A program made the position numbers and the translations under genes. Under the pieces are notes generated by a model. The model was not told the origin of the DNA. It saw nothing but the letters and a program-made list of their open reading frames with translations, and ran no database searches. A DNA stretch of 64,000 nucleotides from Oopsacas minuta (lineage: Eukaryota > Animalia > Porifera), in assembly GCA_024704765.1 (NCBI GenBank), contig JAKMXF010000363.1:153521-217520 (forward strand), in the 5' to 3' direction. Shown one piece after another: positions 22,301 to 49,600 of this stretch; position 1 is the stretch's first letter; each line of letters begins with the position of its first letter.

Positions 22301-23500
22301 AGTGAATGTATCTCATGGCGAATTGTGAATTTTATAGCCACATAAATCAAAAGAAAAAACCGATACAGAAATACATTTCAAGCATAAAACGGGTAATTAT
22401 ATTGGCCCAATAAAATGATAATATTGCTTTTAGAAGTTCTCAATGATGACTGATTAGGCCACGCAAAATACATTACTTGTTTCTCATCCATCTCTTTCTG
22501 CGAAATAGGGGCGGGGAGCGGGGGGCGGCTATTATTCTTATTTTTTGGTTAGCGTCATTTTACTAATTTATTTAAACTATCTCGTTAATACGAAATTCTG
22601 ATAAGACTAACAATATTCGTACATAATCAGGTCCCTACAATCGTACTTCAATGGATATTACTCCGGTTTATGAACTCCGGAAAGGCGAATAAATTTTAAC
22701 CTTACGGACGGTCCATTGGTGTTCGTATTAAGCTTACACTGTATATGGAAAACTAATATTCACTTCCTCTCTATAATCTGAATTATTGTACAATTATATG
22801 AGAGAATTATAATTCGCAGTTCGCATAAACGACTCAAACTATCTTTCTATGCTTTAAATGTAAAATGAAATTCTGGTATATGTGCCATACAGGGAGGGGT
22901 GTTTGGGCCTGACTCGGACAGGTTTGAGTCTTGGACGAAAATTCACACCTGACAAAATTATGATGCCATTGCCACCTTTTTGAATTTTCGAAAAATCACA
23001 TGATTAGCCACACTGCTCAGCGATCTAGCAAGCGAAGGGCGCTAGTGTTAAATAATTAGCTTGTTTCGAAGATGCTCATCTGTGAATATAAGTATTAAAT
23101 AAAGATATGTAATAAAATATAATAAATTGCCGAGGAGGGAGATTAAATGGGGCAGGCGGGGATGATAAACAAGTATATTATTCATTAATAATTGTTTGCA
23201 TATTTTCTAAATATATTTTGTGAATAATTAGGCGATTAAAGATGGAATTATGTTTGATTTGAGAACTTGAATATTCATAACTACAGAACTGCATGAGGGA
23301 TTGAGAAATAATTAGAGGTAGAAGTTAGCTGCGAAAACTACAGTTCAAATCAGCTGTTTATAAAATGCATTGCGTTAAGTTCAAAATGAAAAAATGAACA
23401 AAATTAACTCACCATCACTAGTGCTGTAGGGTAGACCTCCTACAAAGATTTTCGAAGCATCCCCATAGTCAAAGTTGGGAGATCGCTCATTAACTGGCAT
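13323..23500 (-). CDS. MSI: Musashi-like RNA-binding protein (two RRMs), multi-exon
   Basis: GT-AG exons read by hand: 23500-23413 (MPVNERSPNFDYGDASKIFVGGLPYSTSD), 20512-20430 (DELNRVFSRFGEISEVVVMKYSLTKRSR after removing one T), 18971-18878 (GFGFVTFADAASVDRVLNEHEREPIVLNRKK), 18212-18168 (IDPKRAIPKKITARR), 17588-17508 (TKKLFVGGISSDTSQDDVYDYFKDFGN), 17039-16991 (IVEAMLIFDKSTNKHK), 16507-16425 (GFGFVTYDKCDTVDEICCQQFHFINGKK), 14567-14504 (VETKRAQPKD...), 14021-13866 (Tyr-rich) and 13372-13323. Phases are compatible except for the 1-nt excess in exon 2. The C-terminal end was not determined. Confidence 0.9.
14720..14928. mobile_element. hAT-type MITE
   Basis: Termini CAGTGGCGG...CCGTCACTG; perfect 8-bp TSD GTATGTGG (14712-14719 and 14929-14936). 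Confidence 0.8.
15534..15692. mobile_element. Tc1/mariner (pogo-type) MITE
   Basis: TA|CAGTGGAACCC...GGGTTCCACTG|TA. Confidence 0.85.
16235..16401. mobile_element. pogo/Tigger-like MITE (related copy at 19285-19375)
   Basis: CAGTCAACTTTCGTTATATCGAAGCTCA...TTCGATATAACAGGAATTGACTA with TA flanks. The 19285 copy reads CAGTCGACTCCTGGTATATCGAAGCTCA...CGATATAACTGGAGTTGACTG|TA. Confidence 0.7.
16662..16748. mobile_element. Short MITE with a 9-bp target duplication
   Basis: CAGTGGCG...CGCCTCTG termini flanked by ATAATCTGC on both sides (16653-16661 and 16749-16757). Confidence 0.7.
20776..21228. mobile_element. hAT-type MITE
   Basis: CAGAGGTGCCCAAC...GTTGGGCACCCCTG; TSD CTCTAATT/CTCTAAAT (7/8 match). 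Confidence 0.75.
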
Positions 23501-24512
23501 TTTTTCTAACAACAACGTGCAGATAATAATAAGTAATATAGGACTAAAACTATGCAGGTGCCAAAAAGGAAAAAATATAAAGTTTCAAGCTTTATATAGT
23601 CAAAAGGGTTCACTGAAATTTGATATTTTTCCTATCATCAGCCTTGGGTACAATTGCAGAATCTTACACCCCCCAACTATTTTAATGTGGTCAAAAATTC
23701 CTATATGCACCGTTCAAGAGCTCGTTGAGAAGAGTTGATAGAGCTAAGAACTCCAAAATCGGAATAAAATCGACAAAGTTACGAAAAATTTACTTCCTAA
23801 GCCAAATCCTATGATGGGGGAGAATTTATTACTCACTATAGTCAAATTGTATTGATTTATACATTACAATTACCATAGGAATGCTCATACTGTTGATATT
23901 GCGGTTATACACGCGTGTTACTCTACTCTTTCATGCTCATTTGTTTGCTATCCAGTGTATTTCACTGCAGGTAATTATTCTTGTTACTTTAAAGGAAAGC
24001 AGGTCACAAGATAATGCTGTCTGCAACACTAAATATTATACAGTACAACATTGCATTTAATATTTCATACAGTGGCACCTCGATAATTCGAACCTAGTTA
24101 ATGGAATTCCCGATATGACGCATTATTTGCATATATTCTGTTACCTTTAATCGTAGTTCAATTTGTATTACTCCGGCCTTGGCAAACCAATTTTGATCTT
24201 TCGTTTGTGTTCGTATCAATGTTAGAAACAATTCATGTACTATTTAATCGCATAGTTATTGATCCAGCTTCTCTCCAGGTGCCTTAGTAATGTTGGAACA
24301 ACTTATGATAGTGGACAGAGTATTATATATATGACACCTCATGGCTGGATATAATACTATGGGTAGTAGTTATATTTGGAGTAACTAATTAGTATTAAGC
24401 TTTCTATCTACTACTTTAACTACAAATCTACAATATAACAAGTACTGCTACAAAAGAAACACCAAAGCAGAAGTATGATACTAATTACAGGTTACTGATA
24501 ACTATCAAAACA

Positions 24513-25075
24513 GTTAGACAACTGGATATTGTTTCCTTATTTCCATGATAAGGTTGGAGAAACTACCTCGTCCATATTCTTTCTGCCAACAAACTTCAGA
24601 TAAGTGAGTATCTAAAAGTACGGGGTTAGTAGTCATGCAATTCCTCAGCCGTTTCTCCGCACCACCCCATATACTCTCAGCTGTTTGTGTATGTACGCTT
24701 GTAGTAGGGTCAACAAAATTGAAACTATGGTTGACGGTGAGAGGCTGAAACTTGCAGCAGGGATAGAATTATACGAAGTATGATAGTGCCCAGAAGAATA
24801 TATCTCTGGACTAGAGGAATTAATGTTGCAGCCGACCTGTCTTGATCAGGTATCATAAAGGTATCTTTTGTCTCTCAATCTATTCCTCCAAGTACCCATT
24901 GACCTGATAGCATACGACCTCTTGAATACTTTCGATGTCCAAACTTTGATTCATCTATTTCTACAATATGCCCAGGCCCTCCAATTGTTTGAGGATTGAC
25001 TAAAAAATCTTCAACACATAGGTCTCTGAGGGAGTTCTTCCAGTCTGTTATAGTAGGCTCTCCCCACCCAGATTC
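24513..25075 (-). pseudogene. Merlin (IS1016/ISXO2-like DDE) transposase fragment
   Basis: Hand translation gives TDWKNSLRDLC...QTIGGPGHIVEIDESKFGHRKYSRGR...QWV, HLTVNHSFNFVDPTT and LDTHLSEVCWQKEYG...EIRKQYP*, all diagnostic Merlin motifs; frameshifts and stops are present. Confidence 0.85.
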
Positions 25076-25084
25076 TTGTTGATT

Positions 25085-25965
25085 CGAAATGTACTGATAA
25101 TTCTATAAAGAAGCCTCTATCTTTACGATCATCATTTTTCCTATGATAGAAATTGAGTATATTCGGCCAGTTTAGTACCCTTTTACTTTCTAGTACTTGA
25201 TATACAGAAAAATCATAGTTTGACCCTGACATCTGTGTAAATACTCCAAAATGGTGTTCAAATGGATTATTTTGTATAAAAGATGATAATACATAAGAGA
25301 ATCCACATTCTCCAGTCATATATTCTACAAGTTTTGGTAGAGCAATGCTTGAAACTATCTTGTACAGAAAATAGCTCTTTGTTGTCAGATGGACGATGCT
25401 AATTGCATCAACCATATTCCAAACTTCCCATTCTTGGAGGATCTCTACGTCACATTATTTAGTGTTTATGTCATCGAAGCTATAGACGATGAATTTCCTC
25501 TGCTCTCCTTCAAATACATCAACGCACTGTTCAGTTGCCTATATAGTACAATACCATAAAACATATAATACTACAAGTCGAGTATTTGACACAACTTGAC
25601 ATACTTGGATCTGTAATCACGATCTAATTGTCTCTATCAAGCCTTGGATATTTAATAGCGTGATCTTTAAGACGATCAGGGTAACCAGGAAGATATTTAG
25701 GAATTGGACATTTCTTCAATGTAGCCTCTATTGATCGTATCTTCGTTTGGCCATCAGTTTCAGGATAAGTTTGCTTTGTCAACTATATCATCAGAATCAA
25801 AGTGCTTAGCAGAAACCAAAATGTTTTCATTGTGTGAAGATCTATAATATAATTCATAATTACGTAATGATAAATTAATCCTCAATCGTAGAATTATCAC
25901 TTAATTTATATCCAAGTTCTAAAGAAATACATAACATATCTATGAAGAAATCGTTTCTACTAATG
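25085..25965 (-). pseudogene. Internally deleted P-element transposase remnant (THAP piece plus catalytic C-terminal piece)
   Basis: GFSYVLSSFIQNNPFEHHFGVFTQMSGSNY resembles the P-transposase QDxLExxFxxxRxxxGxN motif; ILVSAKHFDSDDIV...LKKCPIPKYLPGYP resembles the C-terminal part of a THAP domain. Confidence 0.65.
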
Positions 25966-26252
25966 AACGATATCTTGGGGCCCTGAAGGAATGTGAAACA
26001 CTGCAACATCAGTATGATCATGCTAGTATCCAGTGGTACATTAGTGGAAACGATTTCTTCATAGATATGTTATGTATTTCTTTAGAACTTGGATATAAAT
26101 TAAGTGATAATTCTACGATTGAGGATTAATTTATCATTACGTAATTATGAATTATATTATAGATCTTCACACAATGAAAACATTTTGGTTTCTGCTAAGC
26201 ACTTTGATTCTGATGATATAGTTAACACCCAAACTCATCTTGAAACTGATGG
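25751..26252. repeat. Hairpin with ~215-bp arms and a ~75-bp loop (second copy ~47378-47886)
   Basis: ccatcagtttc...tttctactaatg (25751-25965) is the reverse complement of cattagtggaaa...gaaactgatgg (26039-26252). Confidence 0.9.
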
Positions 26253-26285
26253 ATCTACATAGTAGTGTTATTGTTGTTAGAGAAG

Positions 26286-26415
26286 ATGCCTATTATTGAG
26301 AATCGGTCCACTGACTTTGACTATGGGAATGAAGGTTATTATCGAAAATTGAAACCATTTGTGAAAGACACAGCGAAAATCTTTGTAGGAGGTCTACCCT
26401 ACAGCACTAGTGATG
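26286..26415 (+). pseudogene. Inverted copy of Musashi exon 1 (long variant)
   Basis: ATG...MPIIENRSTDFDYGNEGYYRKLKPFVKDTAKIFVGGLPYSTSD G|GTGAGT; no downstream RRM exons were found on the plus strand. Confidence 0.75.
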
Positions 26416-28425
26416 GTGAGTTAATTTTGTTCATTTTTTCATTTTGAACTTAACGCAATGCATTTTATAAACAGCTGATTTGAACTGTAGTTTTCGCAGC
26501 TAACTTCTACCTCTAATTATTTCTCAATCCCTCATGCAGTTCTGTAGTTATGAATATTCAAGTTCTCAAATCAAACATAATTCCATCTTTAATCGCCTAA
26601 TTATTCACAAAATATATTTAGAAAATATGCAAACAATTATTAATGAATAATATACTTGTTTATCATCCCCGCCTGCCCCATTTAATCTCCCTCCTCGGCA
26701 ATTTATTATATTTTATTACATATCTTTATTTAATACTTATATTCACAGATGAGCATCTTCGAAACAAGCTAATTATTTAACACTAGCGCCCTTCGCTTGC
26801 TAGATCGCTGAGCAGTGTGGCTAATCATGTGATTTTTCGAAAATTCAAAAAGGTGGCAATGGCATCATAATTTTGTCAGGTGTGAATTTTCGTCCAAGAC
26901 TCAAACCTGTCCGAGTCAGGCCCAAACACCCCTCCCTGTATGGCAAAAATCAGCCCCGGAGTGTGCACTAATATTTTATTATTATTATTTAAATTGTACA
27001 ATAATTCAGATTATAGAGAGGAAGTGAATATTAGTTTTCCATATACAGTGTAAGTTTAATACGAACACCAACCGACCGGACCGTACGGTTAAAATTTATT
27101 CGCCTTTCCGGAGTTCATAAACCGAAGTAATATCCATTGAAGTACGATTGTAGGGACCTGATTATGCATATATAGGTATTATTCTTTTTACTGTGCCGAA
27201 TATACGTTAATAGGGTGCACCAGTATTGAAATGCATGCCTTAGCCTAGGCTGCGCAAACGGTCAGACTACTCAGGCTATGGGATGACCACTTTACTATTG
27301 CTCAAGCAATCGCCCGACCGCCATTTAGCCTCATCCGCCGCACTTGCTTAGTTCGTGTACTGTGCAGACTACTATTTAGTCAGTCAGTATTGGTATCATG
27401 GCTAATTTTTTTTAGTTTTTATGCCAAAGTTTTTGGAAAGTGAAAGATTTTGAATTTGGAGAGGTGAAGAATTATTTTCAGTTCCAAATGGTGTCGTAAT
27501 TATGGTTTATAATATTTTGCTCAAGGCTACAAAAGTTGATAAGTGAGTATCAAATAGTCGCCCCTGATATCGGTAAAACTATGATATTTCCTGTTTAGGT
27601 TGAAAAGACTTACTAAAGGAGGTTCACCTATGTATTTCCCTATCATTTATGTTTATAGGTGATTTTCACTCAAATACAGCCTTGAAAATATACCCTTTAC
27701 ATTAATCTATGTTATTTAATCTCAATTGATCTCTGTTGGTTTGTTGTTGTTTGTTGTTTTCTCTGTTGTCAAGAATAGGATTTATGGTTTGGTATTTTGT
27801 AATTGCAATCGCAATCCAAAGATGTTGCATACCTCTATATTTATCGCGATTGGCAAAGTGTAGGAAACTACGCAACTTTCTCTTCTCAAAGTGCCGGTTT
27901 CATAAGTACTCCTCCCCTTCCATAAATATACCCCAGCGTGAAGAATACTGTGTAGTATTCTTCCGAGGGAAAAATGATTCTGTGTAGTCAAGTTTCCCCT
28001 CTTCAAAGAATTTGTAGATATTTCTTACTAGACATAATCTATATTATTAAATCTCAATGATTGTCTGTTTGTTTGTATGTTTGTTTGTTTGTCCGTTGTC
28101 AAGGAAAGGATTTATGGTATGCACTTTTGAAATTTCCGCATAACTATGTATTTATCGTGTTTATCAGGGAAGTATAGAATTCAATAAAACTTGACTAAAT
28201 ATATCGTACATACTGAATCCGATTTTCACACTTTGGATTAATCATATGTAAATTTATTGTTGTTTTTATGAATATAAAGTATAAAAATCTCAATATTGAG
28301 GTATAATCATACTTTCAACGACTATACTGGAGTAATCGAGTATTCTTGGTCTGAAAATTGTAAACAACACCAAAATTAATAATCTCAATTGTTGTTTGTC
28401 TGTTTGTTTGTTTGTTGAATACTTC

Positions 28426-28476
28426 GAGGCGCAATGCTCCGAGTTCATCGCGAAGCGACGAGCCAAAGGCTCGTAG
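28426..28476 (+). mobile_element. 3' end of a DINE-1/Helentron-like interspersed repeat
   Basis: GAGGCGCAATGC..GAGTTCATCGCGAAGCGACGAGCCAAAGGCTCGTA, with stem-loop CGAGCC-AAA-GGCTCG, occurs at 28426, 38396, 41179 and 50049 (+) and 17745-17796 (-). Plus-strand copies lie downstream of a (GTTT/GTCT)n microsatellite. Family assignment is inferred. Confidence 0.5.
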
Positions 28477-29100
28477 GTAATTAATTCCGAACGATAAGAT
28501 TATTGGTTTACTTGTTAATGACTGATACATACAGTTTAACATCGTTCGATCGAACTCGGTAAATAAGAATATCATGACATGTTAAAGAATAAATATTTGA
28601 ACTAAATCGAGCCACTACCCACAGTTTGACGAAATTCTCTAGTATTCACGCAATGGGCATAAATCCCGGGGATATATCCCCCACTTTTTACACAAGGATG
28701 CGAATGGTCTATATAATATTACCAGCATACAATCGAAACAGTTTTATCTTATCACCTATTTCTTAAAATATTATTCCTTCTCAGATTGTGAAGAAAGTGG
28801 GATTTACTTTCATTTTACATCGGTTTTTTCTGACGATATTTCCGTGCAATGGAATAGTGAGAAATCCGGTTTCTACTTAAATATAACTCAAATATTTGGC
28901 ATAAGTATGCCAAATGAAAATATCAATTCGAGCGGACTTAGTTCAACTAGGGTTGTTATGAGCGAAATTCGTAACAACAGGCTTAAATTCGATAGCTTTT
29001 GTCCTAAAGGGTGTAATAAATAACTAAATTATAACCGGAGTTTCATTGTATTTGTTGCAGTCTAGTGCACATGGACCCGAGTACTTAGTCTAATTGGACT

Positions 29101-29827
29101 CAGGGATGTCCTTCTCTAATTATAAGTATGGGAGCGATATTTCAAATTTCAATTTCAATTGAATATATCCTAATTTCTAATACAAAATTCAAACAATATA
29201 CTGGTAATTGAATTAATAAGATAAGATATGAATAATATCAAAGGCTTAATAGTAAATCTGAAAATAGAGTTCTAACAAGTGATTGAGTACCCAAAATTAT
29301 TTAACTAATAATACTTCCAAATTTCTTCTTGTTTATGGGGCTCAGAAATTTTGGATTTCAATCCATGGATATCTGTTGCTGAATTATGATGCAAGAGCCA
29401 AGATTTAGAATATTCCAATGGTCTCCAAATAGTCAGTGGTGGACCATTAAGCTGGATAAACAGCAAAGAAGAAACGTGTTCTATTGTAAGCAGGGTTCGT
29501 TTCTCATCCAATATGATATTCATTTGATTAAACACCTTTTCGCATTCAGATGAGTTGCATGGAATAACTTCTACGATATTTTCACGGCGCTATAAAGTAA
29601 ACATTTGCTCTCTCAACTCGACTTAATTATATTTGGAACAAATTTCAATTGATTTCAAATATTGATTGTATGCTACTGTAGATATCAAGTACACACATTC
29701 AGTAACTTGTGAAGTAATTGTTACTTGCTAATTTGATTTGTTAAAAAAAGTATGAGAGCGACACTCCCGCTACCTGAAAAAGTATGGGAGTGGTGCTCCC
29801 ATCCGCTCCCACAGCAGGACACCACTG
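29101..29827 (-). mobile_element. Non-autonomous hAT element with the transposase C-terminal dimerization fragment (copy 2 at 50723-51454)
   Basis: Termini CAGGGATGTCC / GGACACCACTG; perfect 8-bp TSD ATTGGACT. Encodes VIPCNSSECEKVFNQMNIILDEKRTLLTIEHVSSLLFIQLNGPP. Confidence 0.9.
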
Positions 29828-30625
29828 ATTGGACTTAGACTAGTTCAAGTGCTATTAGAACCTAACTCTACGATAATGGGTGGATTCAATAACTCAATTA
29901 CGTTATACACGATTATCAAGGGTTCTGAGGGTCAATGTCCGAACTTGGGAATAACTAATCAGCATTTACGCAGGTTTATTAAAAACAGCCGTGATTATTA
30001 TATCAGAAATTACAAGATTTTGATGATTGGAAGAGTATAAGTTATCAAAATAATCAACATATTGTAAAGGCAGGTGTTTGTGGCTGTATTTCTTTTCTTC
30101 TTTAGGAAGAATAACTATATATACATATACCGACCGTTCTAAGATTTTGCTAATCTATTTACAATTTTACAATATTCAGTACTTCTAGCATTGACAGATA
30201 GTAAAATATTTCAGAGGCTAATTTCCTGTAGCTATTGTTTACAACAACTATATAGAATCAGGCTTTATTGACATTCGTGATATACGTATACAACGTAATT
30301 AAGTTATTGAATCCACAGCATTAGCTTGAAGTTGGATTCCAATAGCACTTGATCTAGTCCAAGTCCAATTAGACTAACTACTCGGGTCCAAGTGCACTTA
30401 GACCAGTCGAACTGCACTTGGACTGCAACAGATATATATTCTACCTCTTTAATGTATAAAATAGCCACTTAGCGTAGAGTATATATCAATTTTGTTAGAA
30501 TTTTGGTTAATTTAGTTAGCTTTTTGATTATTTTTGTTAGACTTTTGAGTAATTTTGTTTGACATTTTACAAATTTGGTCGACTTTTAGCGAATTTTAGT
30601 AGAGGCAAGTCTGACATTAAATATA

Positions 30626-30745
30626 CAGTAGAACTCGGATAAGACGTACCCCCTCGGGAAACAGAAATTAGTACGTCTTAACCGAGTGTACGTCTTAAAC
30701 CTAGTGTACGTCTTAAGCCGAGTACGTCTTATCCGGGTTCTACTG
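30626..30745. mobile_element. pogo-type MITE with internal GTACGTCTTA repeats
   Basis: TA|CAGTAGAACTCGGATAAGACGTAC...GTACGTCTTATCCGGGTTCTACTG|TA. Confidence 0.9.
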
Positions 30746-31125
30746 TATTTTGTTAACCTAATAAATAGAACCCATTCTATAATGCCATAATTAATCTATT
30801 CAATTAATATACGTACTATGTGGCCATTTCACGAAAAAAATGGTCCGAGGCCAAATCCTACTATCTAGCCAAAGGTACTGAATATGAATCTGGTGTATGA
30901 CGGGCTGAGAATGTAGCCCTGGACGACCGCCCCTTTAGCCCATCCCTAGGTACTCCATTTGCCCTTTCTTGTTTCAGAACCTGTATTTGTGGGGACCCCT
31001 ACATCTGCAGGGGTCCCATGCCACGTGAGCCGCCCTTCTCCATATATATTTCATTAATTATATTTGTCACCTATATCAGAGAGTTTTCTTCTAGATATTA
31101 GAAAAAGAAAACTCTGAGAGGTTGA

Positions 31126-31460
31126 CCCTTATACACTAGTGTGGAAGTAACTTTATGTTAATAGTGGTGATATAGAGAAGTCACACTTTTGGCAGTGCAC
31201 TAATATTAAATATATAAGTAAATCAACTATGTTTGTAATTCGCACTAAAAACAATTGAAATTCAATTGGCAATAAATACTAATCATTGTTCCAGTCATTA
31301 AAATAAATCCAAAACTAGAATTCTAGTCAAACTCATCTCTGCAATTATTGCACACGTAGTATTGGTCTGAATGGTCAACACAAATATTGATCTCACAGTA
31401 ATAACAAGTTGTTGCTACCTTTCTGTCAAGTTTGCGTGTACAAAGATAACAGCGTTTTAT
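31126..31460 (-). mobile_element. piggyBac-like 3' remnant (C-terminal Cys-rich domain plus a possible terminus)
   Basis: KRCYLCTRKLDRKVATTCYYCEINICVDH fits the piggyBac CxxC..CxxC..C..H domain; ttga|CCCTTATACACTAG at 31122-31139 resembles a TTAA|CCCTT end with one mismatch. Confidence 0.6.
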
Positions 31461-31943
31461 AGCTTTCTTTTTCGTGTTGATAGAAGCTGATGCAGGTGTA
31501 AATGAAGAAGTAGGTTCATTAGGAAGAATAGATGTAAGAGAAGAAGTTTCACTAGTAACAGTATTTTCAATAGAAGTAGTAGGAAAAATGCAATCAATAG
31601 GATCGTTAGGAGGTAAAGCAACTGGTAGGAACACCAGGTGTAGGATTGCAATGAAGAGACCAATTGGATGAATTCCCCTCCAGAATTCCCTTGAGCAGGA
31701 AATAGACGGAGGAGTCTGGCTGTAATTAGTTGACATGTGATTTTGCTGGTGATTTTAATGCTTATTTATTGGAACATGAAAAAGATCTTTATTGGGATAC
31801 GGACTGTTCGGTACGTAGACATTTGGTTATGTTATTAAGATGTATAGTAGAAAGTGGTAAATATTTACTGTTAATGCTAGATTAATGAATGGGAAATATT
31901 GAAACAAAATGATAAGTAATGATAAGGAGAGTGTGCACTAGTT

Positions 31944-32235: not shown

Positions 32236-32531
32236 CTGAGGAATTTCCTTTCTCTTAAGGCCAATCTTTATTTCCAAGCAGTTACCCAATTGCTTATCTG
32301 GCATGTAGGTGCTCATTAGTTCTCTTCACTATTGTCAACCCCCTTAGTCTGTAATCTTGGTTTACACTGAAAATTTGGAAGGTATCTGTAGTCCACATCC
32401 GATAAACTATACTATCATTTGTATAATTAGCAATGACGACACCTCGTAGACCACCACCAGACTATAACTCAGCATTGTCCATGCCAACAGCTAATACGTA
32501 CTATAGAGCTCTGCACAGAGAAAACTCTGAG

Positions 32532-34074: not shown

Positions 34075-35516
34075 CATAGCCTACTAAACATAAGGCCTGT
34101 TGTATGATATTTTGAGGCACTGTATTATAGTACCATGGATATTCAATATCTATAATATTTTGAGGCAGTTGGAATCCATAGAAATTTGTGCGATTAATTT
34201 AGTTCCAGTTTGACTTGATGATAATCTCAGTTATTACCAGATGTATATTATTACAACTCATATTACTAACTCCTCTTTTTCCATTACTTCAGTTATTTTC
34301 ATCCTCAACTTATTTGAATCAATAATATAAATTTTGCAAAAAAAGTCGTAGCGAATAAACAAATATGATAGAAAGTCAGAAATATACATTTTGAAAAGAG
34401 GTTATATTTTAGATGAAAACTAAAGACCTTCATATACATCTGGTAATAACTGAGATTATCATCAAGTCAAACTGGAACTAAATTAATCGCACAAATTTCT
34501 ATGGATTCCAACTGCCTCAAAATATTATAGATATTGAATATCCATGGTACTATAATACAGTGCCTCAAAATATCATACAACAGGCCTAACAGTAACTCGA
34601 ATTTTTGGCACCAGGGATGCAGTATTAGAAGAAAGCATTTATAAACATAGTTTCTTTATTGCAGAAAAATGCATTTTTGGCTGAATAAATGTATTACATT
34701 TTTGTAGAACTGCAAATTTTACACAAATAAATGGTAAAAACTTTTAGGAATGTGTAAAAATATGTCTCTAGTAAGCATTTATTTTGTAAATATATCATTC
34801 TTTGATGCTTTGTAGAACGTTAAATATTGCAATTATCAACTCAAAGTGAATAAATGAAATGATCTATAGATCCTTTTTACAAAATGTCACAAATTTGTCA
34901 TTCAAAAGTTGGCTCGTTGTTGAGTTAAGGTAGAGACCATGGATGGCAATTTTTTATGAATATTCAATTATAACTCGAGAATCATTTCAATTATCGTAAA
35001 ATCAGGATAGTCAATTTATACTATTTACCCGACTTCCCATACGCTTGCAATACATTTTGATATGATCTCTCTCACCAATGTGACGATACCCGTATATGGT
35101 CATTTTCAATATTCTGCAATACACTTTAATTCATAAAATTTACCATCCATGGTCTCTACCTTAACTCAACAACGAGCCAACTTTTGAATGACAAATTTGT
35201 GACATTTTGTATAAAAGGATCTATAGATCATTTCATTTATTCACTTTGAGTTGATAATTGCAATATTTAATGTTCTACAAGACATCAAAGAATGATATAT
35301 TTACAAAATAAATGCTTACTAGAGACATATTTTTACACATTCCTAAAAGTTTTTACCATTTATTTGTGTAAAATTTGCAGTCCTACAAAAATGTAATACA
35401 TTTATTCAGCCAAAAATGCATTTTTCTGCAATAAAGAAACTATGTTTATAAATGCTTTCCGCTAATACTTCATCCCTGGTACTTTTACTGTTAGGCCTTA
35501 TATTCAGTAGGTTATG
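34075..35516. mobile_element. Galileo-like (P superfamily) foldback element
   Basis: Termini CATAGCCTACTAAACATAAGGCC / CATAACCTACTGAATATAAGGCC (reverse complement); 7-bp TSD GCTGTAC (34068-34074 and 35517-35523); inner ~350-bp arms at 34610-34960 and 35130-35480. Confidence 0.85.
34094..34586. mobile_element. Nested hairpin MITE (~155-bp arms) in the left arm of the foldback element
   Basis: taa|GGCCTGTTGTATGAT...ATCATACAACAGGCC|taa; the corresponding position in the right arm reads TAAGGCCTAA. Confidence 0.85.
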
Positions 35517-40100: not shown

Positions 40101-43100
40101 TCTTGGTTGTTCGAGCTCTCATGGATATTTCTATCAGAATATGCCGAAGGTTGACACATGTAAACGCTAATAGTTTCAGAAATCAGTATATTAATGTTAT
40201 TCTCATTCTAAAACAAGAGTTATACAATTTCATCTATGATAAATAGGAATTAATAATCAAATAGATATTAAACAATTTGGAAATTCCTCCAAGACTATAA
40301 TCAGTGAATGAATTGTTGATGGATTAGGAGTATAATGTCAGTTCATTAACATCATTACTTGCATAATTAAGCCACTGTTATACAAGTTTGTTGCGTCACG
40401 CTTAAGTGGTCAATTGTGGCCGACACAATGAATATTCGAGTCAGAAAGTGTCAAAATTCTATGTATAAATGAATGATTAAGTCTTTTTCTACGCTATCGA
40501 CAGGAATAAGTCTCTAGTGATAAATACTAACTAGCAAGTTAATTCTATAACTAAACGGGAAATACTAATAGTCATCAGCTAGCTAGGCTCAATTCCTTTT
40601 TTTATTTTTTTCCCTTCTGACTTTTTTGAGCAGTAGCTCTTTTGCTACTGGATAGCTGGGTTGGGAAGGAGACCCGGGAGTATCTGGGTCGGAACACCTT
40701 CTTTTTCTTGTCCGTATCGACATTTCTATAGGAATTAGACACCAATAAAATACATCTATATTTGTAAGTCTCAATTGTTGTTTGTTTGTTTGTTTGTCTG
40801 TTGTCAAGGCAAGGATTTACGGTATGCAATATTTAAATTGTCCATAACTATGTATTTACTGTGTTGTGTTGAATTCAAAGAAGTAAATAGAATTCAATAA
40901 AACTTCACTAAAGTATATCCAACATGATGAATACGATTATCACACTTTTGGATTAATCATATGCAAATTTATTGTTGTTTTATGAAAAAAAGTAAACAAA
41001 TTAGCCAAATCTCAAAATTAGGTAGATACGTCCTCTCAACGGGTAAAAAGGGGCTTGATCTTAAAAATACTTCAATAACATATATGTCATATACGCATGC
41101 TTGTGAATTACATTATTTTTAATATATCTATATTGAAATACTCAAACGGGCCGTCATTTGGAGAAAAATAGATACCGTGAGGCGCAATGCGTCGAGTTCA
41201 TCGCGAAGCGACGAGCTAAAGGCTCGTATAATATGACACACATGCACATATAATTAATCTATACTATAGTCAGAGGGACCGGATGGATTATGGATTGGAT
41301 TATGATTTGGATCCATCCGCCCCTCTGACTATAGTGGGGTATCTCTAATTGTACAGATTCCCTAATCGTCCACCTGCCAAAAATATGAGTACTACCGTAT
41401 TTCCCTGAATAAGCACCCCGGCGCTTATTTTTTTCGTGGATGTGAAACCCCGGCGCTTATTCTTTTCGTTCATATGAAACCCCCGGCGCTTATTCGGGGA
41501 AATACGGTATGTGTACAATACAGTAAGTTTAAGAAATTTGTTATCCTACTTAGCATTCAGAATATTCACAAAAATAAATATTTGAAATAGTCATAAACTG
41601 AATATTTGCATGAGAATTCGAGATTTTATTATACAAAACTCTGAGTCAAGTAAAGCACAGTCAAACCCGACTTTCCTAACTCTGTATAGTTCTTTCTAAT
41701 TAATTTTACTATTACAGTAATACTCCATGTAATTCAGCTACCAAAGGTGTAAACAAGGTTGATAATACAGGAAAATAGAAATGGGATTTCCTCATCTAGC
41801 ATGGAGGTCGTAATAAATATGACTTTAGTAATATTTATTATGAATCAAACTAATTTCCCCTGCACTTAACAAAATTCAATTATTCTACATCTTATGGGTT
41901 GACACCAGCTGTCCAATACAAAATATGTAAAAGCATTAGAAGAAATAAAATATATGTTATAGGAGATGTTGTCAATCGGGCGATTTGATAGTATATGGCT
42001 TCAATACTGTACTTTTATAGTTTCTAATTCCATCAGTAAGCAAACTGATAATTTAGCCAAGTATATTACGATATATCTAATGTACTTATTTAGGAATGGA
42101 CGTACTAAACTCCCTCAATGCTTGTGTTTGAGGTCAACTAATAAGGAATAGCCAAGTATACTGCAAAATTGACTTTCATGTTTCGTGGTAGATTTGAATC
42201 TTCTTCAGATATTATTTTCTTGTTTTCATTCCATCGTAATGGTAATGATTTTTTTCAATAACAGTTTTTAAGGTAAAATGATTACAGAAAAGAAGTGTAT
42301 ACCCAAGGAGCTTAAAGTGTTGGAGTTTTAAAATTAGTAATGGAGACAATTGGATAAAATCTCCTATTAATTGTATAACTTCATTTTGACGCTTGCATAT
42401 TTTACATAAGAGTGTGGTAATCTTACTTTCGATGGTAATTTTCAGTCATTTTAAGTATGAATAAATAAAAAACATTCTAGGTTTACTATTTATTTGTGGA
42501 ATCGTGCTATCGTACGATCGTACGACGATTGAAGCATGTCAGCTATAATTTGTTGAAGTCACACAATTCACTTAAAAACTGTATTGAAGCCATATACCAT
42601 CAGATCGCCAACATCTCCTATGACATATACTCTATACATGTATGTATACCCAGAATTGATTATAGAAACTGGAAGGCCCAGGATGGATTTTTGAACACAG
42701 ATGTATATTGACCCGGCATGGACAAGTCCGATTCTTGGACGAAAATTCACACATAAGACGGAAGTATGCTGAATCACATGATTGGGCAATGTCAGCCAGT
42801 ATAGGTGTTAGATGGTGGCAATTAAAATCACAGGTACCCGATAGTGATAGTGAAATATCTCCCTCAGTGCTGTGAACTCCAGAATTGACAATACTATCCT
42901 CAGTTTCATCTGCCGAAACAGCAATATATTAACAGTGGGCTGAAAGATAGTCAGAAGCGGCACAAGGGAGGGCCAGGGGCATGCGCCCCACCTCATTAAT
43001 TTAAGTATGTCCCAGCTTAATAACCTGTACCCCACCAGTAATGACTGGCTAACTACGCAACTGAGGATAGTTCATACAATAATTGTTAGTATACGTAAGT

Positions 43101-43117
43101 CTGTACCTTGAACGGAT
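37107..43117. repeat. Tandem duplication (37107-39031 versus 39990-43117) with copy-specific indels
   Basis: Shared coiled-coil exon, DINE-like repeat, hAT MITE (38866-38977 / ~42952-43063) and SVQG|TDLRILTIIV end. Copy 2 has an extra ~1.17 kb (41530-42702) and a MITE, and lacks ~155 bp. Confidence 0.9.
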
Positions 43118-44047
43118 CTAGTCAAAGAACGGATGTTGTTCTTTCCGTCCTCCTTCACTTCTTCCTCCCACTTCTTCTTATTAGTCACTGCATCCTGTAG
43201 CTCATTCGCAGCTGAAGTATAGTCCTTGATGAGTTGGGCTACAACCTTCTTTAATGAGACATTGTCTCTTTCTACTTTTTCACACAATTGACACACATAC
43301 GTATGATTATTCTTCCAGGTTCTTACTTCTTCTCCTAATTTTGTTTGTATCTCTTCTCTCTCAGTTTTTACATTTGCCAGTTCAGTTTTCAAATTTAAGA
43401 TTAAGGCATCTACCTGTCTCTTTTGCTCCAATTCCTCTCGTGACTTCTCAGTTATATCTAATGAGCCATGGATAAATATACTATAATAAACCCGGTTTGA
43501 AGGATCATACCTGTTGTTACTGATGGCTTTATTCTAGGAGGAGGGAGAGGGTGATCCTGTGGAGGAGAATTTAAGACAACTGACACTCTCTCTTCATGTC
43601 TCGGTAGTGTACTCTTGAATACAGGAGGAGATTGACCAGGGCATGATTGGTACTTTCCTTCACTGTAGTCTGAAAAATGAAATTAAATTAATATTAATCA
43701 CATATCAGCTGATTATTACAATTTGTATTATTGAATTTAGTATAATTTCTCCTGAATTAATCACCGCTAATATTCACTAATCAACCAAATAATGCTCTAA
43801 TTAAATACCAGATACATAATGTAGATACAATAATACTTACTTGGTGGTATATCAGGTCTCTCTATAGACTGTATAGGTGAATATTCAATAGTAGGAGAGA
43901 AGACATTAACTTCTACTCTAGATCTATCTTCTTGTCTAGTTGCAGGTATTACAGGATTATCTGTACCGGATAAAGTTCCTCTCCTTGCAGGCAAATATGG
44001 GGGGTGCTCTCCGCGACGTGACTTAGCTAGATGATTATTGGCGAAGT
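38986..44047 (-). CDS. Uncharacterized Pro-rich / coiled-coil / C2H2-like exons
   Basis: Phase-1 exon chain 44047-43841, ~43669-43511 and ~43456-43108, open in frame. ORF 39869-40159 is a coiled coil reminiscent of a TRIM BBC region; 39371-39724 contains FLCTQYDKSFSTLHELENHQRERH. Gene boundaries are uncertain. Confidence 0.5.
41395..41507. mobile_element. pogo-type MITE with empty-site paralog
   Basis: TA|CCGTATTTCCCTGAATAAGC...GCTTATTCGGGGAAATACGG|TA; the paralogous site near 38612 reads gagtacTAtgtgtac. Confidence 0.95.
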
Positions 44048-44363
44048 CTAAATAAACAAAGAGTAAATCAACACAATAATACCATACAAACAAGTTATAT
44101 AAACTTGTTTAGTAGACAATAATACCGTCTATAGGATTAACCACAAGATTATACACAAATAATATAAGTAGAAATTTGTAGTAGAAATTATACGAAATCA
44201 ATCAAAGTTTGAGAAATGAAAAAACTCAAAAAGTAATTTTACGTAAAATAGAGGAAAATAGTAAAATTATTTGATACACAAACAGTAGAAAATAAAGAAT
44301 TTTTCGTTTGAATTAATAACATTCAATCGGAATTTGAAATTGAAATATGTACATAGTACATAA

Positions 44364-44475
<112 letters not shown>

Positions 44476-44963
44476 AGTCTTGGACGAAAATTCACACCTG
44501 ACAAAATTATGATGCCATTGCCACCTTTTTGAATTTTCGAAAAATCACATGATTAGCCACACTGCTCAGCGACCTAGCAAGCGAAGGGCGCTAGTGTTAA
44601 ATAATTAGCTTGTTTCGAAGATGCTCATCTGTGAATATAAGTATTAAATAAAGATATGTATTAAAATATAATAAATTGACGAGGAGGGAGATTAAATGGG
44701 GCAGGCGGGGATGATAAACAAGTATATTATTTTATTAATTATTGTTTTCATATTTTCTAAATATATTTTGTGAATAATTAGGCGATTAAAGATGGAATTA
44801 TGTTTGATTTGATAACTTGAATATTCATAACTACAGAACTGCATGAGGGATTGAGAAATAATTAGAGGTAGAAGTTAGCTGCGAAAATTACAGTTCAAAT
44901 CAGCTGTTTATAAAATGCATTGCGTTAAGTTCAAAATGAAAAAAATGAACAAAATGAACTCAC

Positions 44964-45093
44964 CATCACTAGTGCTGTAGGGTAGTCCTCCTACAAAGAT
45001 TTTTGCTGTGTCTTTGAGAAATGTTGATTTTCGATAATAATAACCTTCATTCCCATAGTCAAAGTTGGGAGATCGCTCATCAATAACTGGCAT
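44964..45093 (-). pseudogene. Third copy of Musashi exon 1 (open frame; fourth copy at 47920-48049, +)
   Basis: MPVIDERSPNFDYGNEGYYYRKSTFLKDTAKIFVGGLPYSTSD G|GTGAGT. Confidence 0.75.
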
Positions 45094-46122
45094 TTTTTCT
45101 AGCAACAACGTGCAGATAATAATAAGTAATATAGGACTAAAACTATGCAGGTGCCAAAAAAGGAAAAAATATAAAGTTTCAAGCTTTATATAGTCGAAAG
45201 GGTTCACTGAAATTTGATATTTTTCCTATCATCAGCCTTGGGTACAATTGCAGAATCTTACACCCCCCAACTATTTTAATGTGGTCAAAAATTCCTATAT
45301 GCACCGTTCAAGAACTCGTTGAGAAGAGTTGATAGAGCTAAGAACTCCAAATCGGAATAAAATTGACAAAGTTACGAAAAATTTACTTCCTAAGCCAAAT
45401 CCTATGATGGGGGAGAATTTATTACTCACTACAGTCAAATTGTATTGATTTATACATTACAATTACCATAGGAATGCTCATACTGTTGATATTGCGGTTA
45501 TACACGCTTGTTACTCTACTCTTTCATGTTCATTTGTTTGCTATCCAGTGTTTTCACTGCAGGTAATTCTTGTTACTTTAAAGGAAAGCAGGTCACAAGA
45601 TAATGCTGTCTGCAACACTAAATATTATACAGTACAACATTGCATTTAATATTTCATACAGTGGCACCTCGATAATTCGAACCTAGTTAATGGAATTCCC
45701 GACATGACGCATTATTTGCATATATTCTGTTTCCTTTAATCGTAGTTCAATTTGTATTACTCCGGCCTTGGCAAACCAATTTTGATCTTTCGTTTGTGTT
45801 CGTATCAATGTTAGAAACAATTCATGTACTATTTAATCGCATAGTTATTGATCCAGCTTCTCTCCAGGTGCCTTAGTAATGTTGGAACAAAGTTTTCATG
45901 GATTTATACTTATAATAGTGGACAGAATATTATATATATATGACATCCCATGGCTGGATATAATACTATGGGTAGTAGTTATAATTGGAGTAACTAATTA
46001 GTATTAAGCTTTCTATCTACTACTTTAACTACAAATCTACAATATAACAAGTACTGCTACAAAAGAAACACCAAAGCAGAACTATGATACTAATTACAGG
46101 TTACTGATAACTATCAAAACAG

Positions 46123-46690
46123 TTAGACAACTGGATATTGTTTCCTTATTTTCATGATAAGGTTGGAGAAACTAGCTCGTCCATATTCTTTCTGCCAACA
46201 AACTTCAGATAAGTGAGTATCTAAAAGTATGGGGTTAGTAGTCATGCAATTCCTCAGCCGTTTCTCCGCACCACCCCATATACTCTCAGCTGTTTGTGTA
46301 TGTACGCCTGTAGTAGGGTCAACAAAATTGAAACTATGGTTGACGGTGAGATGCTGAAACTTGCAGCAGGGATAGAATTATACGAAGCCCATTCCTCAGA
46401 AAGTATGGTAGTGCCCGGAAGAATATATCTCTGGATGAGAGGAATTAATGTTGCAGCCGACCTGTCTTGAACAGGTGTCATAAAGGCACCTTTTGTCTCT
46501 CAATCTATTCCCCCAAATACCCATTGATCTGATAGCATACGACCTCTTGAATACTTTCGATGTCCAAACTTTGATTCATCTATTTCTACAATATGCCCAG
46601 GCCCTCCAATTGTTTGAGGATTGACTAAAAAATCTTCAACACATAGGTCTCTGAGGGAGTTCTTCCAGTCTGTTATAGTAGGCTCTCCCC
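46123..46690 (-). pseudogene. Merlin transposase fragment, copy 2
   Basis: VEIDESKFGHRKYSRGRMLSDQWVFGGID*ETKGAFMTPVQDRSAATLIPLIQRYILPGTTILSEEWASY, then in a shifted frame HLTVNHSFNFVDPTTGVHTQTAESIW. Confidence 0.88.
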
Positions 46691-49600
46691 ACCCAGATTC
46701 TTGTTGATTCGAAATGTACTGATAATTCTATAAAGAAGCCTCTATCTTTACGATCATCATTTTTCCTATGATAGAAATTGAGTATATTCGGCCAGTTTAG
46801 TACCCTTTTACTTTCTAGTACTTGATATACAGAAAAATCATAGTTTGACCCTTACATCTGTGTAAATACTCCAAAATGGTGTTCAAATGGATCATTTTGT
46901 ATAAAAGATGGTAATACATAAGAGAATCCACATTCTCCAGTCATATATTCTACAAGTTTTGGTAGAGCAATGCTTGAAACTATCTTGTACAGAAAATAGC
47001 TCTTTGTTGTCAGATGGACGATGCTAATTACATCAACCATATTCCAAACTTCCCATTCTTGGGGATCTCTAAGTCACATTATTTAGTGTTTATGTCATCG
47101 AAGCTATAGACGATGAATTTCCTCTGCTCTCCTTCAAATACATCAACGCACTGTTCAGTTGCCTATATAGTACAATACCATAAAACATATAATACTACAA
47201 GTCGAGTATTTGACACAACTTGACATACTTGGATCTGTAATCACGATCTAATTGTCTCTATCAAGCCTTGGATATTTAATAACGTGATCTTTAAGACGAT
47301 CAGGGTAACCAGGAAGATATTTAGGAATTGGACATTTCTTCAATGTAGCCTTTATTAATCGTATCTTCGTTTGGCCATCAGTTTCAGGATAAGTTTGCTT
47401 TGTCAACTATATCATCAGAATCAAAGTGCTTAGCAGAAACCAAAATGTTTTCATTGTGTGAAGATCTATAATATAATTCATAATTACGTAATGATAAATT
47501 AATCCTCAACCGTAGAATTATCACTTAATTTATATCCAAGTTAAGTTCTAAAGAAATACATAACATATCTATGAAGAAATCGTTTCCACTAATGAACGAT
47601 ATCTTGGGGCCCTGAAGGAATGTGAAACACTGCAACATCAGTATGATCATGCTAGTATCCAGTGGTACATTAGTGGAAACGATTTCTTCATAGATATGTT
47701 ATGTATTTCTTTAGAACTTAACTTGGATATAAATTAAGTGATAATTCTACGGTTGAGGATTAATTTATCATTACGTAATTATGAATTATATTATAGATCT
47801 TCACACAATGAAAACATTTTGGTTTCTGCTAAGCACTTTGATTCTGATGATATAGTTAACACGCAAACTTATCTTGAAACTGATGGATCTACATAGTAGT
47901 GTTATTGTTATTGGAGAAGATGCCTATTATTGAGAATCGGTCCACTGACTTTGACTATGGGAATGAAGGTTATTATCGAAAATTGAAACCAATTGTGAAA
48001 GACACAGCGAAAATCTTTGTAGGAGGACTACCCTACAGTACTAGTGATGGTGAGTTCATTTTTTTCATTTTGAACTTAACGCAATGCATTTTATAAACAG
48101 CTGATTTGAACTGTAATTTTCGCAGCTAACTTCTACCTCTAATTATTTCTCAATCCCTCATGCAGTTCTGTAGTTATGAATATTCAAGTTATCAAATCAA
48201 ACATAATTCCATCTTTAATCGCCTAATTATTCACAAAATATATTTAGAAAATATGAAAACAATAATTAATAAAATAATATACTTGTTTATCATCCCCGCC
48301 TGCCCCATTTAATCTCCCTCCTCGTCAATTTATTATATTTTAATACATATCTTTATTTAATACTTATATTCACAGATGAGCATCTTCGAAACAAGCTAAT
48401 TATTTAACACTAGCGCCCTTCGCTTGCTAGGTCGCTGAGCAGTGTGGCTAATCATGTGATTTTTCGAAAATTCAAAAAGGTGGCAATGGCATCATAATTT
48501 TGTCAGGTGTGAATTTTCGTCCAAGACTCAAACCTGTCCGAGTCAGGCCCAAATACCCCTCCCTGTACGGCAAAAATCAGCCCCGGAGTGTGCACTAATA
48601 TTTTATTATTATTATTTAAATTGTACAATAATTCAGATTATAGAGAGGAAGTAAATATTAGTTTTCCATATACAGTGTAAGCTTAATACGAACACCAACG
48701 GACCGTACGGTTAAAATTTATTCGCCTTTCCGGAGTTCATAAACCGGAGTAATATCCATTGAAGTACGATTGTAGGGACCTGATTATGCATATATAGGTA
48801 TTATTCTTTTTACTGTGCCGAATATACGTTAATAGGGTGCACCAGTATTGAAATGCATGCCTTAGCCTAGGCTGCGCAAACGGTCAGACTACTCAGGCTA
48901 TGGAATGACCACTTTACTATTGCTCAAGCAATCGCCCGATCGCCATTTAGCCTCATCCGCCGCACTTGCTTAGTTCGTGTACTGTGCAGACTACTATTTA
49001 GTCAGTCAGTATTGGTATCATGGCTAATTTTTTTTAGTTTTTATGCCAAAGTTTTTGGAAAGTGAAAGATTTTGAATTTGGAAAGGTGAAGAATTATTTT
49101 CAGTTCCAAATGGTGTCGTAATTATGGTTCATAATATTTTGCTCAAGGCCACAAAAGTTGATAAGTGAGTATCAAATAGTCGCCCCTGATATCGGTAAAA
49201 CTAGGATATTTCCTGTTTAGGTTGAAAAGACTTACTAAAGGCGGTTCACCTATGTATTTCCCTATCATTTATGTTTATAGGTGATTTTCACTCAAATATA
49301 GCCTTGAAAATATACCCTTTACATTAATCTATGTTATTTAATCTCAATTGATGTCTGTTTGTTTGTTGTTGTTTGTTGTTTTCTCCGTTGTCAAGAATAG
49401 GATTTATGGTTTGGTATTTTGCAATTGCAATCGCAATCCAAAGATGTTGCATACCTCTATATTTATCGCGATTAGCAAAGTGTAGGAAACTACGCAACTT
49501 TCTCTTCTTAAAGCGCCGGTTTCATAAGTACTCCTCCCCTTCCATAAATATACCCCAGCGTGAAGAATACTGTGTAGTATTCTTTCGAGGGAAAAATGAT

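What the first reader, a model, noticed from the sequence alone, without database searches (positions are those of the whole stretch)
22925..48560. Arm-to-arm gene conversion in the Musashi palindrome
Seen: both duplicated blocks contain both arms, yet at seven or more sites the two arms of one block agree and differ from both arms of the other. Block 1 versus block 2: GGTCTA/GGACTA, gtgagttaa/gtgagttca, gcgatctag/gcgacctag, ttgccgagg/ttgacgagg, tgtaataaaa/tgtattaaaa, aaaactacag/aaaattacag, gagaacttg/gataacttg. In the 5' half of exon 1 the pattern flips and is arm-specific across blocks. Known: this is the signature of concerted evolution in palindromes such as those on the mammalian Y. Inference: a conversion tract boundary lies inside exon 1.
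Basis: partly seen in the sequence, partly recalled or inferred. Interest (0 to 1): 0.75.

Follow-up and report, generated by a model that had tools for sequence, protein, structure and literature searches.

The report
Gene-converted inverted exon-1 copies in sponge
In a glass-sponge scaffold, the first exon and adjoining intron of an RNA-binding-protein gene sit as two small head-to-head inverted pairs, and each pair has overwritten itself by ordinary gene conversion: a clean but unsurprising case of a well-known process.

Summary
A 7.5-kb segment is present twice (22926-30441 and 44475-52068, about 2% substitution divergence). Each copy has two inverted arms around a roughly 3-kb spacer made mostly of transposons.

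- **Homogenised tract:** In a roughly 575-nt tract the arms of block 1 are identical (0/570). Those of block 2 differ at 2/522 sites plus one 9-nt indel.
- **Site patterns:** The blocks differ at 10 substitution sites, all of the "same within a block, different between blocks" kind. None is arm-specific.
- **Flanks:** Just inside the tract (5' half of exon 1) the arms differ by 25-36%, and just outside by 7-8%. There the pattern is arm-specific across blocks. Segment trees switch topology with 87-99% bootstrap.
- **Age:** Paralogous scaffolds carry the same head-to-head layout, but their inverted copy is a decayed relic about 15% diverged. The inverted repeat is therefore old and the identity is secondary.

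Arm-to-arm gene conversion after the block duplication is the best explanation (about 0.8).

- The arms are 0.6 kb, not Y-like.
- Half of the tract is a dispersed repeat.
- Only one of the four exon-1 copies has a gene body.
- Block 2's most recent tract ends in the intron.
- A 9-N gap cuts one arm.

The scan had already found other conversion-homogenised inverted repeats elsewhere in this genome. No reads were available to check the assembly.

The parts
22926..30441 (+). Block 1 of the direct segmental duplication
   Evidence: 96.9% identical to 44475-52068, about 2% substitutions per 500-nt bin. Its right flank continues colinearly with paralogs on C302 and C166.
44475..52068 (+). Block 2 of the direct duplication. 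Its left edge is hidden by the assembly gap. Its right junction 52068|52069 is a new junction.
   Evidence: sequence beyond 52068 matches C16 and C319, not what follows block 1.
22878..23454 (-). L1 homogenised tract: the last 42 nt of exon 1, the donor, about 230 nt of unique intron and about 300 nt of a dispersed repeat
   Evidence: 0 differences from R1; 22883-23182 has at least 40 copies genome-wide.
26374..26950 (+). R1 homogenised tract
44475..45005 (-). L2 tract, truncated at the gap. It is perfect with R2 over 44475-44950.
   Evidence: L2-R2 2/522 plus a 9-nt indel
48008..48577 (+). R2 tract. It is perfect with L2 over 48054-48529.
23413..23500 (-). Exon 1 of the only complete tandem-RRM gene (L1). 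It carries an in-frame 42-nt deletion abutting the tract edge.
26286..26415 (+). R1 orphan exon-1 copy: ATG, 43 open codons, GTGAGT donor
44964..45093 (-). L2 orphan exon-1 copy
47920..48049 (+). R2 orphan exon-1 copy
23455..26373 (.). Spacer of block 1. It is mostly two dispersed elements (about 23644-25079 and 25352-26041), plus the diverged 5' halves of exon 1 and their upstream DNA.
45006..48007 (.). Spacer of block 2
22796..22877 (.). Heterology at the outer tract edge. L1, C10 and C16 share a roughly 87-nt segment here, where R1 and R2 (26951-26991, 48578-48618) carry the canonical roughly 46 nt of the repeat.
22622..22795 (-). Outer, unconverted continuation of the L arm (partners 26992-27166 and 48619-48788)
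   Evidence: L1-R 7-8% diverged, R1-R2 1.6%
44466..44474 (.). Assembly gap (9 N) after (AGT)33 at 44365-44463
14490..20521 (-). Downstream exons of the L1 gene. Open pieces lie at 20521-20429, 19003-18848, 17588-17478, 17057-16941, 16565-16368 and 14585-14490. They are single-copy in the window.

Best explanation
**History.** An old head-to-head inverted duplication copied the 5' end of a tandem-RRM (Musashi / hnRNP-A/B-type) gene. The copy ran from about 45 nt upstream of the ATG, through exon 1, into a repeat element in intron 1. Later a segment of at least 7.5 kb holding both arms was duplicated 21.6 kb downstream.

**Conversion.** Since then, recombinational repair between the two inverted arms of the same block has copied one arm onto the other, separately in each block. 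This is non-reciprocal gene conversion, for example synthesis-dependent strand annealing after a break.

**Tract limits.** The tract is the largest island of uninterrupted homology. It stops inward at the strongly diverged 5' half of exon 1 (in L1, next to a 42-nt deletion). It stops outward at an 87-versus-46-nt non-homologous segment.

**Shown versus inferred.** Shown are the site patterns, the topology switch, the age of the arrangement and the coincidence of the tract edges with heterologies. Inferred are the repair mechanism, the number of events (at least one per block, and hints of more than one in block 1) and the direction.
For: - **Tract versus flanks:** tract L1-R1 0/570, L2-R2 2/522, between blocks 11-13 of 529-562. 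Inner flank L-R 25-36% with L1-L2 5% and R1-R2 2.5%. Outer flank L1-R 7-8% with R1-R2 1.6%.
- **Site patterns:** 10 block-type sites against 0 arm-type sites inside the tract. Permutation p < 5e-5 and p = 2.5e-4.
- **Trees:** the tract groups (L1,R1) and (L2,R2). The inner segment groups (L1,L2) and (R1,R2). The outer segment groups (R1,R2). Bootstraps are 87-99.
- **Polarisation with C10, C41 and C16:** derived states shared by both arms occur in both blocks. Block 1 has them at 23435, 23338, 23198 and 23024. 23405 also reads as block-1-derived against these outgroups, but the R-type relics share block 1's state there, so it is ambiguous. Block 2 has them at 23263, 23190, 23130 and 23112.
- **Old arrangement:** C10 and C41 have the same arrangement, with a roughly 130-nt dead inverted relic about 15% from the gene copy. 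The repeat is therefore old.
- **No block-to-block homogenisation:** divergence between blocks in the tract (about 2%) equals the block average.
- **Not a mobile unit:** the exon and unique-intron part of the tract occurs only at these four places plus C10, C41 and C16.
Against: - That assembly is a SPAdes hybrid graph assembly (k up to 99) of 150-nt Illumina reads plus corrected PacBio reads from non-clonal specimens. It was then scaffolded with SSPACE and polished with Pilon.
- **Possible collapse.** Such a pipeline (my knowledge of graph assemblers) can collapse isolated differences between near-identical repeats. '100%' may therefore be an overestimate.
- **Phasing.** Which R arm belongs with which L arm depends on phasing across identical spacer stretches of up to 325 nt.
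- **Gap.** A gap sits at one arm's edge.
- **Unexplained divergence.** The tract is about twice as diverged from the paralogous loci (7.3%) as the spacer is (3.3-4.7%).
Confidence: 0.8

Rival explanations
1. Assembly artefact. The arms look identical only because the graph assembler or polisher collapsed or mis-threaded near-identical repeats, or because blocks 1 and 2 are two haplotypes of one locus scaffolded in tandem.
For: - The assembly is a hybrid SPAdes assembly from pooled, non-clonal animals, followed by SSPACE, Pilon and GapFiller.
- A 9-N gap lies exactly at block 2's left edge.
- Phasing across the spacer needs read pairs or long reads at about ten stretches longer than 99 nt.
Against: - The two innermost block-type sites lie 18-65 nt from variants that mark L1, L2, R1 and R2 individually. 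This is within one k-mer or read.
- Consecutive block-type sites are all less than 99 nt apart, so two continuous tract variants exist. Each abuts both an L-type and an R-type flank, which already requires L-R exchange however the blocks are phased.
- Block 2's right junction is a contiguous new junction, and the sequences following the two blocks are unrelated. This speaks against a simple haplotig.
- Even if the blocks were alleles, arms alike within an allele and different between alleles would still mean conversion.
Confidence: 0.1
2. No conversion. The inverted arm was created independently and recently in each block, or the tract is a mobile composite element that inserted four times.
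For: - The outer 300 nt of the tract is a dispersed repeat with at least 40 copies.
- The C16 copy starts at the same mid-exon point.
Against: - R1 and R2 share R-specific inner and outer flanks at 97-98%, as do L1 and L2 on the inner side. Both arms therefore existed before the block duplication.
- C10 and C41 show that the arrangement is older still.
- The exon and unique-intron part occurs at only seven places, all in this paralogous family.
Confidence: 0.04
3. Selection or parallel mutation keeps the arms identical without copying.
For: All four exon-1 copies keep an ATG, an open frame and a GTGAGT donor. All indels in the coding part are multiples of three.
Against: - More than 90% of the tract is intron and transposon.
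- The same tract differs by 2% between blocks, so it is not constrained.
- Ten identical parallel changes are expected at roughly 0.07 sites (my estimate from the divergences).
Confidence: 0.02

Closest known systems
Large sex-chromosome palindromes with arm-to-arm gene conversion (human Y P1-P8, primate and mouse X, willow sex chromosome; PMC8600007, PMC8327919, PMC8981503, PMC7023750, bioRxiv 10.1101/800185)
   Same: Inverted arms lie around a unique spacer. Arms of one copy are more alike than the same arm in another copy. Identity is maintained by non-reciprocal exchange.
   Different: The tract here is 0.58 kb (total arm homology about 0.9 kb), against more than 8-10 kb there. It carries a gene fragment plus a transposon, not whole testis-expressed genes. 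No sex linkage is known. The converted tract is only the middle part of the arm.
Concerted evolution of small inverted gene duplicates (from my own knowledge: Drosophila Hsp70Aa/Ab and inverted duplicates in C. elegans; not checked in papers here)
   Same: Similar scale (hundreds of nt to a few kb), head-to-head orientation, and conversion tracts bounded by divergent flanks.
   Different: Here three of the four copies are exon-1-only fragments without a gene body.
Other conversion-homogenised inverted repeats noted by this scan in the same genome (s1-309866, s1-230951, s1-221476)
   Same: Same genome. Old inverted duplicates with a sharply bounded near-identical internal block.
   Different: Those involve whole genes. 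Here a second copy of the whole palindrome gives an internal control: the four-way site pattern. I did not re-examine those loci.

Membership tests
Inverted repeat (palindrome) evolving in concert by arm-to-arm gene conversion | Two inverted arms flank a non-duplicated spacer on one molecule | tested here: met
   arms 22878-23454 / 26374-26950 and 44475-45005 / 48008-48577, with spacers of 2.9 and 3.0 kb
Inverted repeat (palindrome) evolving in concert by arm-to-arm gene conversion | Arms of one copy are more similar to each other than to the same arm of an independent copy | tested here: met
   0/570 and 2/522 within blocks against 2.1-2.3% between blocks. The tract tree groups by block.
Inverted repeat (palindrome) evolving in concert by arm-to-arm gene conversion | The duplication is older than the arm identity suggests (diverged flanks or unhomogenised orthologous copies) | tested here: met
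   flanks are 7-36% diverged and arm-specific. The C10 and C41 relic arm is about 15% diverged.
Inverted repeat (palindrome) evolving in concert by arm-to-arm gene conversion | Arm identity is verified on single molecules and is not a product of assembly | not testable with these tools
   No reads were available. There is only an indirect linkage argument on the k-mer scale.
Large (Y/X-type) palindromes | Arms longer than about 8-10 kb at more than 99% identity, carrying intact genes | tested here: not met
   the near-identical tract is 0.58 kb, and only a fragment of exon 1 lies within it.
Musashi family of RNA-binding proteins | Two N-terminal RRMs with orthology specifically to Musashi rather than hnRNP A/B, Hrp1 or DAZAP1 | tested here: inconclusive
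   exon pieces hit Pfam RRM_1. The best solved relatives are hnRNP A2/B1, yeast Hrp1 (PDB 2cjk), hnRNP A1 and D-like, and Musashi 1/2, with similar scores.

The most novel reading that the evidence does not exclude
The orphan exon-1 copies may not be debris. One possibility is that the 0.58-kb perfect inverted repeat (exon 1 end, intron and transposon) is transcribed through as a hairpin. That hairpin would feed small RNAs against the Musashi-like paralogs or the repeat family, with conversion or selection keeping the stem perfect. Another possibility is that the R copies are live first exons supplying alternative, fast-diverging N-termini while conversion keeps the RNP2-encoding half constant. 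The retained ATGs, donors and in-frame-only indels are compatible with the second idea. Nothing here tests either one.
Probability: 0.05. Interest if true: 0.55.

Novelty: new member of a known kind. Interest (0 to 1): 0.25.

Why it matters
It is a tidy, internally controlled example of concerted evolution in an early-branching animal. The duplicated palindrome lets conversion be read directly from four-way site patterns, and both tract edges sit at heterologies.

It adds to several similar loci already seen in this genome, which suggests that conversion between short inverted repeats is common in this glass sponge. It also warns annotators that three of the four 'Musashi exon 1' copies are fragments.

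It does not reveal a new mechanism.

Tried and rejected
- **Downstream exons for R1, L2 and R2.** I used tblastn of the L1 exon pieces, RNP1 and GFGFV motif scans in six frames, and whole-genome DNA and protein searches. None was found. The gene body exists only on C363, C10, C41 and C115.
- **Mobile-element origin of the tract.** Rejected, because only the outer 300 nt is dispersed.
- **Simple haplotig origin of block 2.** Not supported. The sequences following the two blocks are unrelated, and block 2's right junction is a new contiguous junction.
- **Palindromic chimeric long reads.** Rejected on reasoning alone, because the arms have a 3-kb spacer and distinct flanks.
- **GC-biased conversion.** The nine polarised changes show no bias, but there are far too few to judge.
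- **Direction of conversion.** There are only single-site hints. At 48039, R2 keeps the ancestral T while L1, R1 and L2 share C. At 23405, block 1 shares its state with the R-type relics and block 2 with the gene-type paralogs. Together these would need more than one event in block 1, but this is weak.
- **Musashi orthology.** Unresolved.
Full report
**Source**

The window is G000:C363:153521-217520, from a genome of 61.46 Mb in 365 contigs. The DNA is AT-rich (about 34% GC) and has GT..AG introns.

The size and scaffold count match the published assembly of the glass sponge Oopsacas minuta (PMC10280926). Earlier notes of this scan give the same name. It is not human.

That paper describes the assembly as follows:
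- SPAdes hybrid assembly, k up to 99.
- Input was 150-nt Illumina reads plus Canu-corrected PacBio reads from non-clonal specimens.
- It was followed by SSPACE, Pilon and GapFiller.

**Anatomy**

- Self-comparison shows a direct duplication: 22926-30441 matches 44475-52068 (96.9% with gaps; about 2% substitutions in every 500-nt bin).
- Each block holds an inverted pair. L1 22878-23454 and R1 26374-26950 are 100% identical over 577 nt. L2 44475-44950 and R2 48054-48529 are 100% identical over 476 nt.
- The only gap in the window, 9 N at 44466-44474 after (AGT)33, cuts the outer end of L2.
- Each arm starts with a copy of exon 1 of a tandem-RRM gene, and the copies are transcribed away from each other. 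They lie at L1 23500-23413 (-), R1 26286-26415 (+), L2 45093-44964 (-) and R2 47920-48049 (+).
- All four copies have an ATG, an open frame ending ..KIFVGGLPYSTSD and a GTGAGT donor.
- Only L1 has the rest of the gene, on the minus strand down to about 14490.
- No further RRM exons lie on the plus strand or elsewhere on this scaffold. The gene body occurs only on C363, C10, C41 and C115.
- The exon pieces hit Pfam RRM_1. By sequence they resemble hnRNP A2/B1, yeast Hrp1, hnRNP A1 and D-like, and Musashi 1/2 about equally. 'Musashi-like' is therefore only a group label.
- Exons were searched one at a time by reference. I did not build or search a joined model.

**Composition of the arm** (gene orientation)

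1. About 45 nt upstream of the ATG plus the 5' half of exon 1. This part is strongly diverged between L and R.
2. The tract: the last 42 nt of exon 1, the donor, about 230 nt of intron found only in this gene family, and the first 300 nt of a dispersed repeat. That repeat has at least 40 copies genome-wide at 85-96% identity.
3. A heterology. L1, C10 and C16 carry a roughly 87-nt segment where R1 and R2 carry the canonical roughly 46 nt of the repeat.
4. About 175-200 nt more of the repeat (22622-22795 / 26992-27166 / 48619-48788).

The spacer is mostly two other dispersed elements.

**The observation**

- In the four-way alignment the tract has 10 substitution sites, plus a 1-nt indel, where both arms of block 1 agree and differ from both arms of block 2.
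- No site is arm-specific, and there is one singleton (48039).
- From 23476 / 26313 inwards all variable sites are arm-specific.

Distances:

| Segment | Within block (L-R) | Same arm across blocks | Between blocks |
|---|---|---|---|
| Inner flank | 25-36% | L1-L2 5%, R1-R2 2.5% | n/a |
| Tract | L1-R1 0/570; L2-R2 2/522 plus a 9-nt indel | n/a | 2.1-2.3% |
| Outer flank | L1-R 7-8% | R1-R2 1.6% | n/a |

- A Sawyer-type permutation of variable sites gives p < 5e-5 for L1-R1 and p = 2.5e-4 for L2-R2.
- Maximum-likelihood trees switch topology. The inner segment groups by arm (94-98). The tract groups by block (87 and 99). The outer segment groups R1 with R2 (99).

**Age and polarity**

- Scaffolds C10, C41 and C16 carry paralogous copies of the region.
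- In C10 and C41 the gene's exon 1 faces, across the same spacer, an inverted copy. That copy is only a roughly 130-nt relic with no ATG, a donor changed from GT to AT, and about 15% divergence from the gene copy.
- The head-to-head arrangement therefore predates the split of these loci, and the identity seen in the window is secondary.
- In the spacer, blocks 1 and 2 are sister copies 2% apart and 3.3-4.7% from C10, C41 and C16.
- With C10, C41 and C16 as outgroups, both blocks have derived states shared by both arms. Conversion therefore acted in each block.
  - Block 1: 23435, 23338, 23198 and 23024. Site 23405 also reads as block-1-derived against these outgroups, but the R-type relics share block 1's state there, so I treat it as ambiguous.
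  - Block 2: 23263, 23190, 23130 and 23112.
- Divergence between blocks in the tract equals the block average, so there is no sign of block-to-block homogenisation.

**Boundaries**

- In block 1, identity begins exactly at 23454 / 26374, inside exon 1. In L1 this lies next to a 42-nt in-frame deletion. The deletion sits between two CGAAAAT repeats that are present in the other copies.
- In block 2 the perfect stretch ends about 10 nt into the intron. Only two substitutions and one 9-nt indel separate L2 and R2 from there up to the same exon point. Beyond it divergence jumps to about 25%.
- The outer edge coincides with the 87/46-nt heterology.
- Both edges are thus places where homology is interrupted. 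This is what is expected if strand exchange or heteroduplex extension stops at heterology. That last step is inference from general knowledge of recombination.

**Artefact risk**

I could not see reads. A graph assembler can flatten isolated differences between near-identical repeats, so '0 differences' may be slightly optimistic.

Three points argue that the site pattern is real:
- Variants that individually mark L1, L2, R1 and R2 lie 18-65 nt from the innermost block-type sites.
- All consecutive block-type sites are less than 99 nt apart.
- Two continuous tract variants therefore exist, and each is joined to both an L-type and an R-type flank within one k-mer or read. This requires L-R exchange whatever the long-range phasing.

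Which R goes with which L depends on pairs or long reads bridging identical spacer stretches of up to 325 nt.

A simple haplotig explanation for block 2 is not supported:
- The sequences after the two blocks are unrelated.
- Block 1 continues colinearly with paralogs on C302 and C166.
- Block 2 joins sequence related to C16 and C319 at a contiguous new junction.
- Even allelic blocks would still imply conversion.

**Comparison and verdict**

The process is that of sex-chromosome palindromes (PMC8600007, PMC8327919, PMC8981503, PMC7023750). The object, however, is a 0.6-kb inverted gene fragment and does not meet the size or gene-content criteria of those palindromes.

The scan had already found conversion-homogenised inverted repeats on other DNA of this genome (s1-309866, s1-230951, s1-221476). 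I did not re-test those.

The finding is real and correctly interpreted, with the corrections above, and it is ordinary. What remains unexplained:
- Why the 5' half of exon 1 is 19-36% diverged among all lineages.
- Why the tract is about 7.3% from the paralogous loci when the spacer is about 3.5% from them.

Noticed in passing
window 23456-23500 (L1), compared with 44965-45093, 26286-26414 and C10/C41 (L014, L012): The 5' half of exon 1 (about 30 codons) is 19-36% diverged among the L, R and C10/C41 lineages, several times more than neighbouring intron and spacer. All four indels in it (3, 3, 3 and 42 nt) are in frame. The only copy with a gene body (L1) carries the 42-nt deletion.
   Followed up: partly
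L013/L016 (C16:88960-89960) versus window 24341-25510 and 26382-26945: In C16 the spacer is joined directly to mid-exon 1, within a few nt of the block 1 conversion edge. About 870 nt (R-side upstream DNA plus the 5' half of exon 1) is missing, yet the outer flank is L-type. This would fit a crossover or spacer inversion followed by a deletion, but it was not tested.
   Followed up: partly
window 5823-12299 versus 58570-64000: A large outer inverted repeat (92-96% identity) lies about 11 kb beyond L1's exon 1 on the left and about 10.6 kb beyond R2's exon 1 on the right. It is roughly symmetric about 35.4 kb, where small inverted repeats sit (34093-34587, 34610-35480). The DNA between it and the exon-1 copies is not mirrored.
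   Followed up: no
window 26646-27166 (canonical), 22550-23182 (variant): A dispersed repeat family of more than 520 nt has at least 40 copies at 82-96% identity. L1, C10 and C16 share a variant with an 87-nt replacement, and the R copies are truncated at 27166.
   Followed up: partly
window 23644-25079, 25352-26041, 28036-29100, 29101-29768: The spacer and the rest of the duplicated block are a mosaic of several other dispersed elements. One is foldback-like, with internal inverted repeats at 25751-26252.
   Followed up: no
L011/L014/L017 (C10) and L018/L012/L015 (C41): C10 and C41 each hold two direct copies of the relic exon 1 plus spacer, about 18-27 kb apart. C41 also has a long tandem array of a 43-nt unit (C41:53548-54881) where the window has one unit. 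Block duplication near this gene seems to have recurred in the paralogous loci.
   Followed up: partly
tract (22878-23454) versus C10, C41 and C16: The tract is about 7.3% diverged from the paralogous loci, while the adjacent spacer is 3.3-4.7% diverged. One possible cause is older R-type variants being copied into L arms. This is not resolved.
   Followed up: partly
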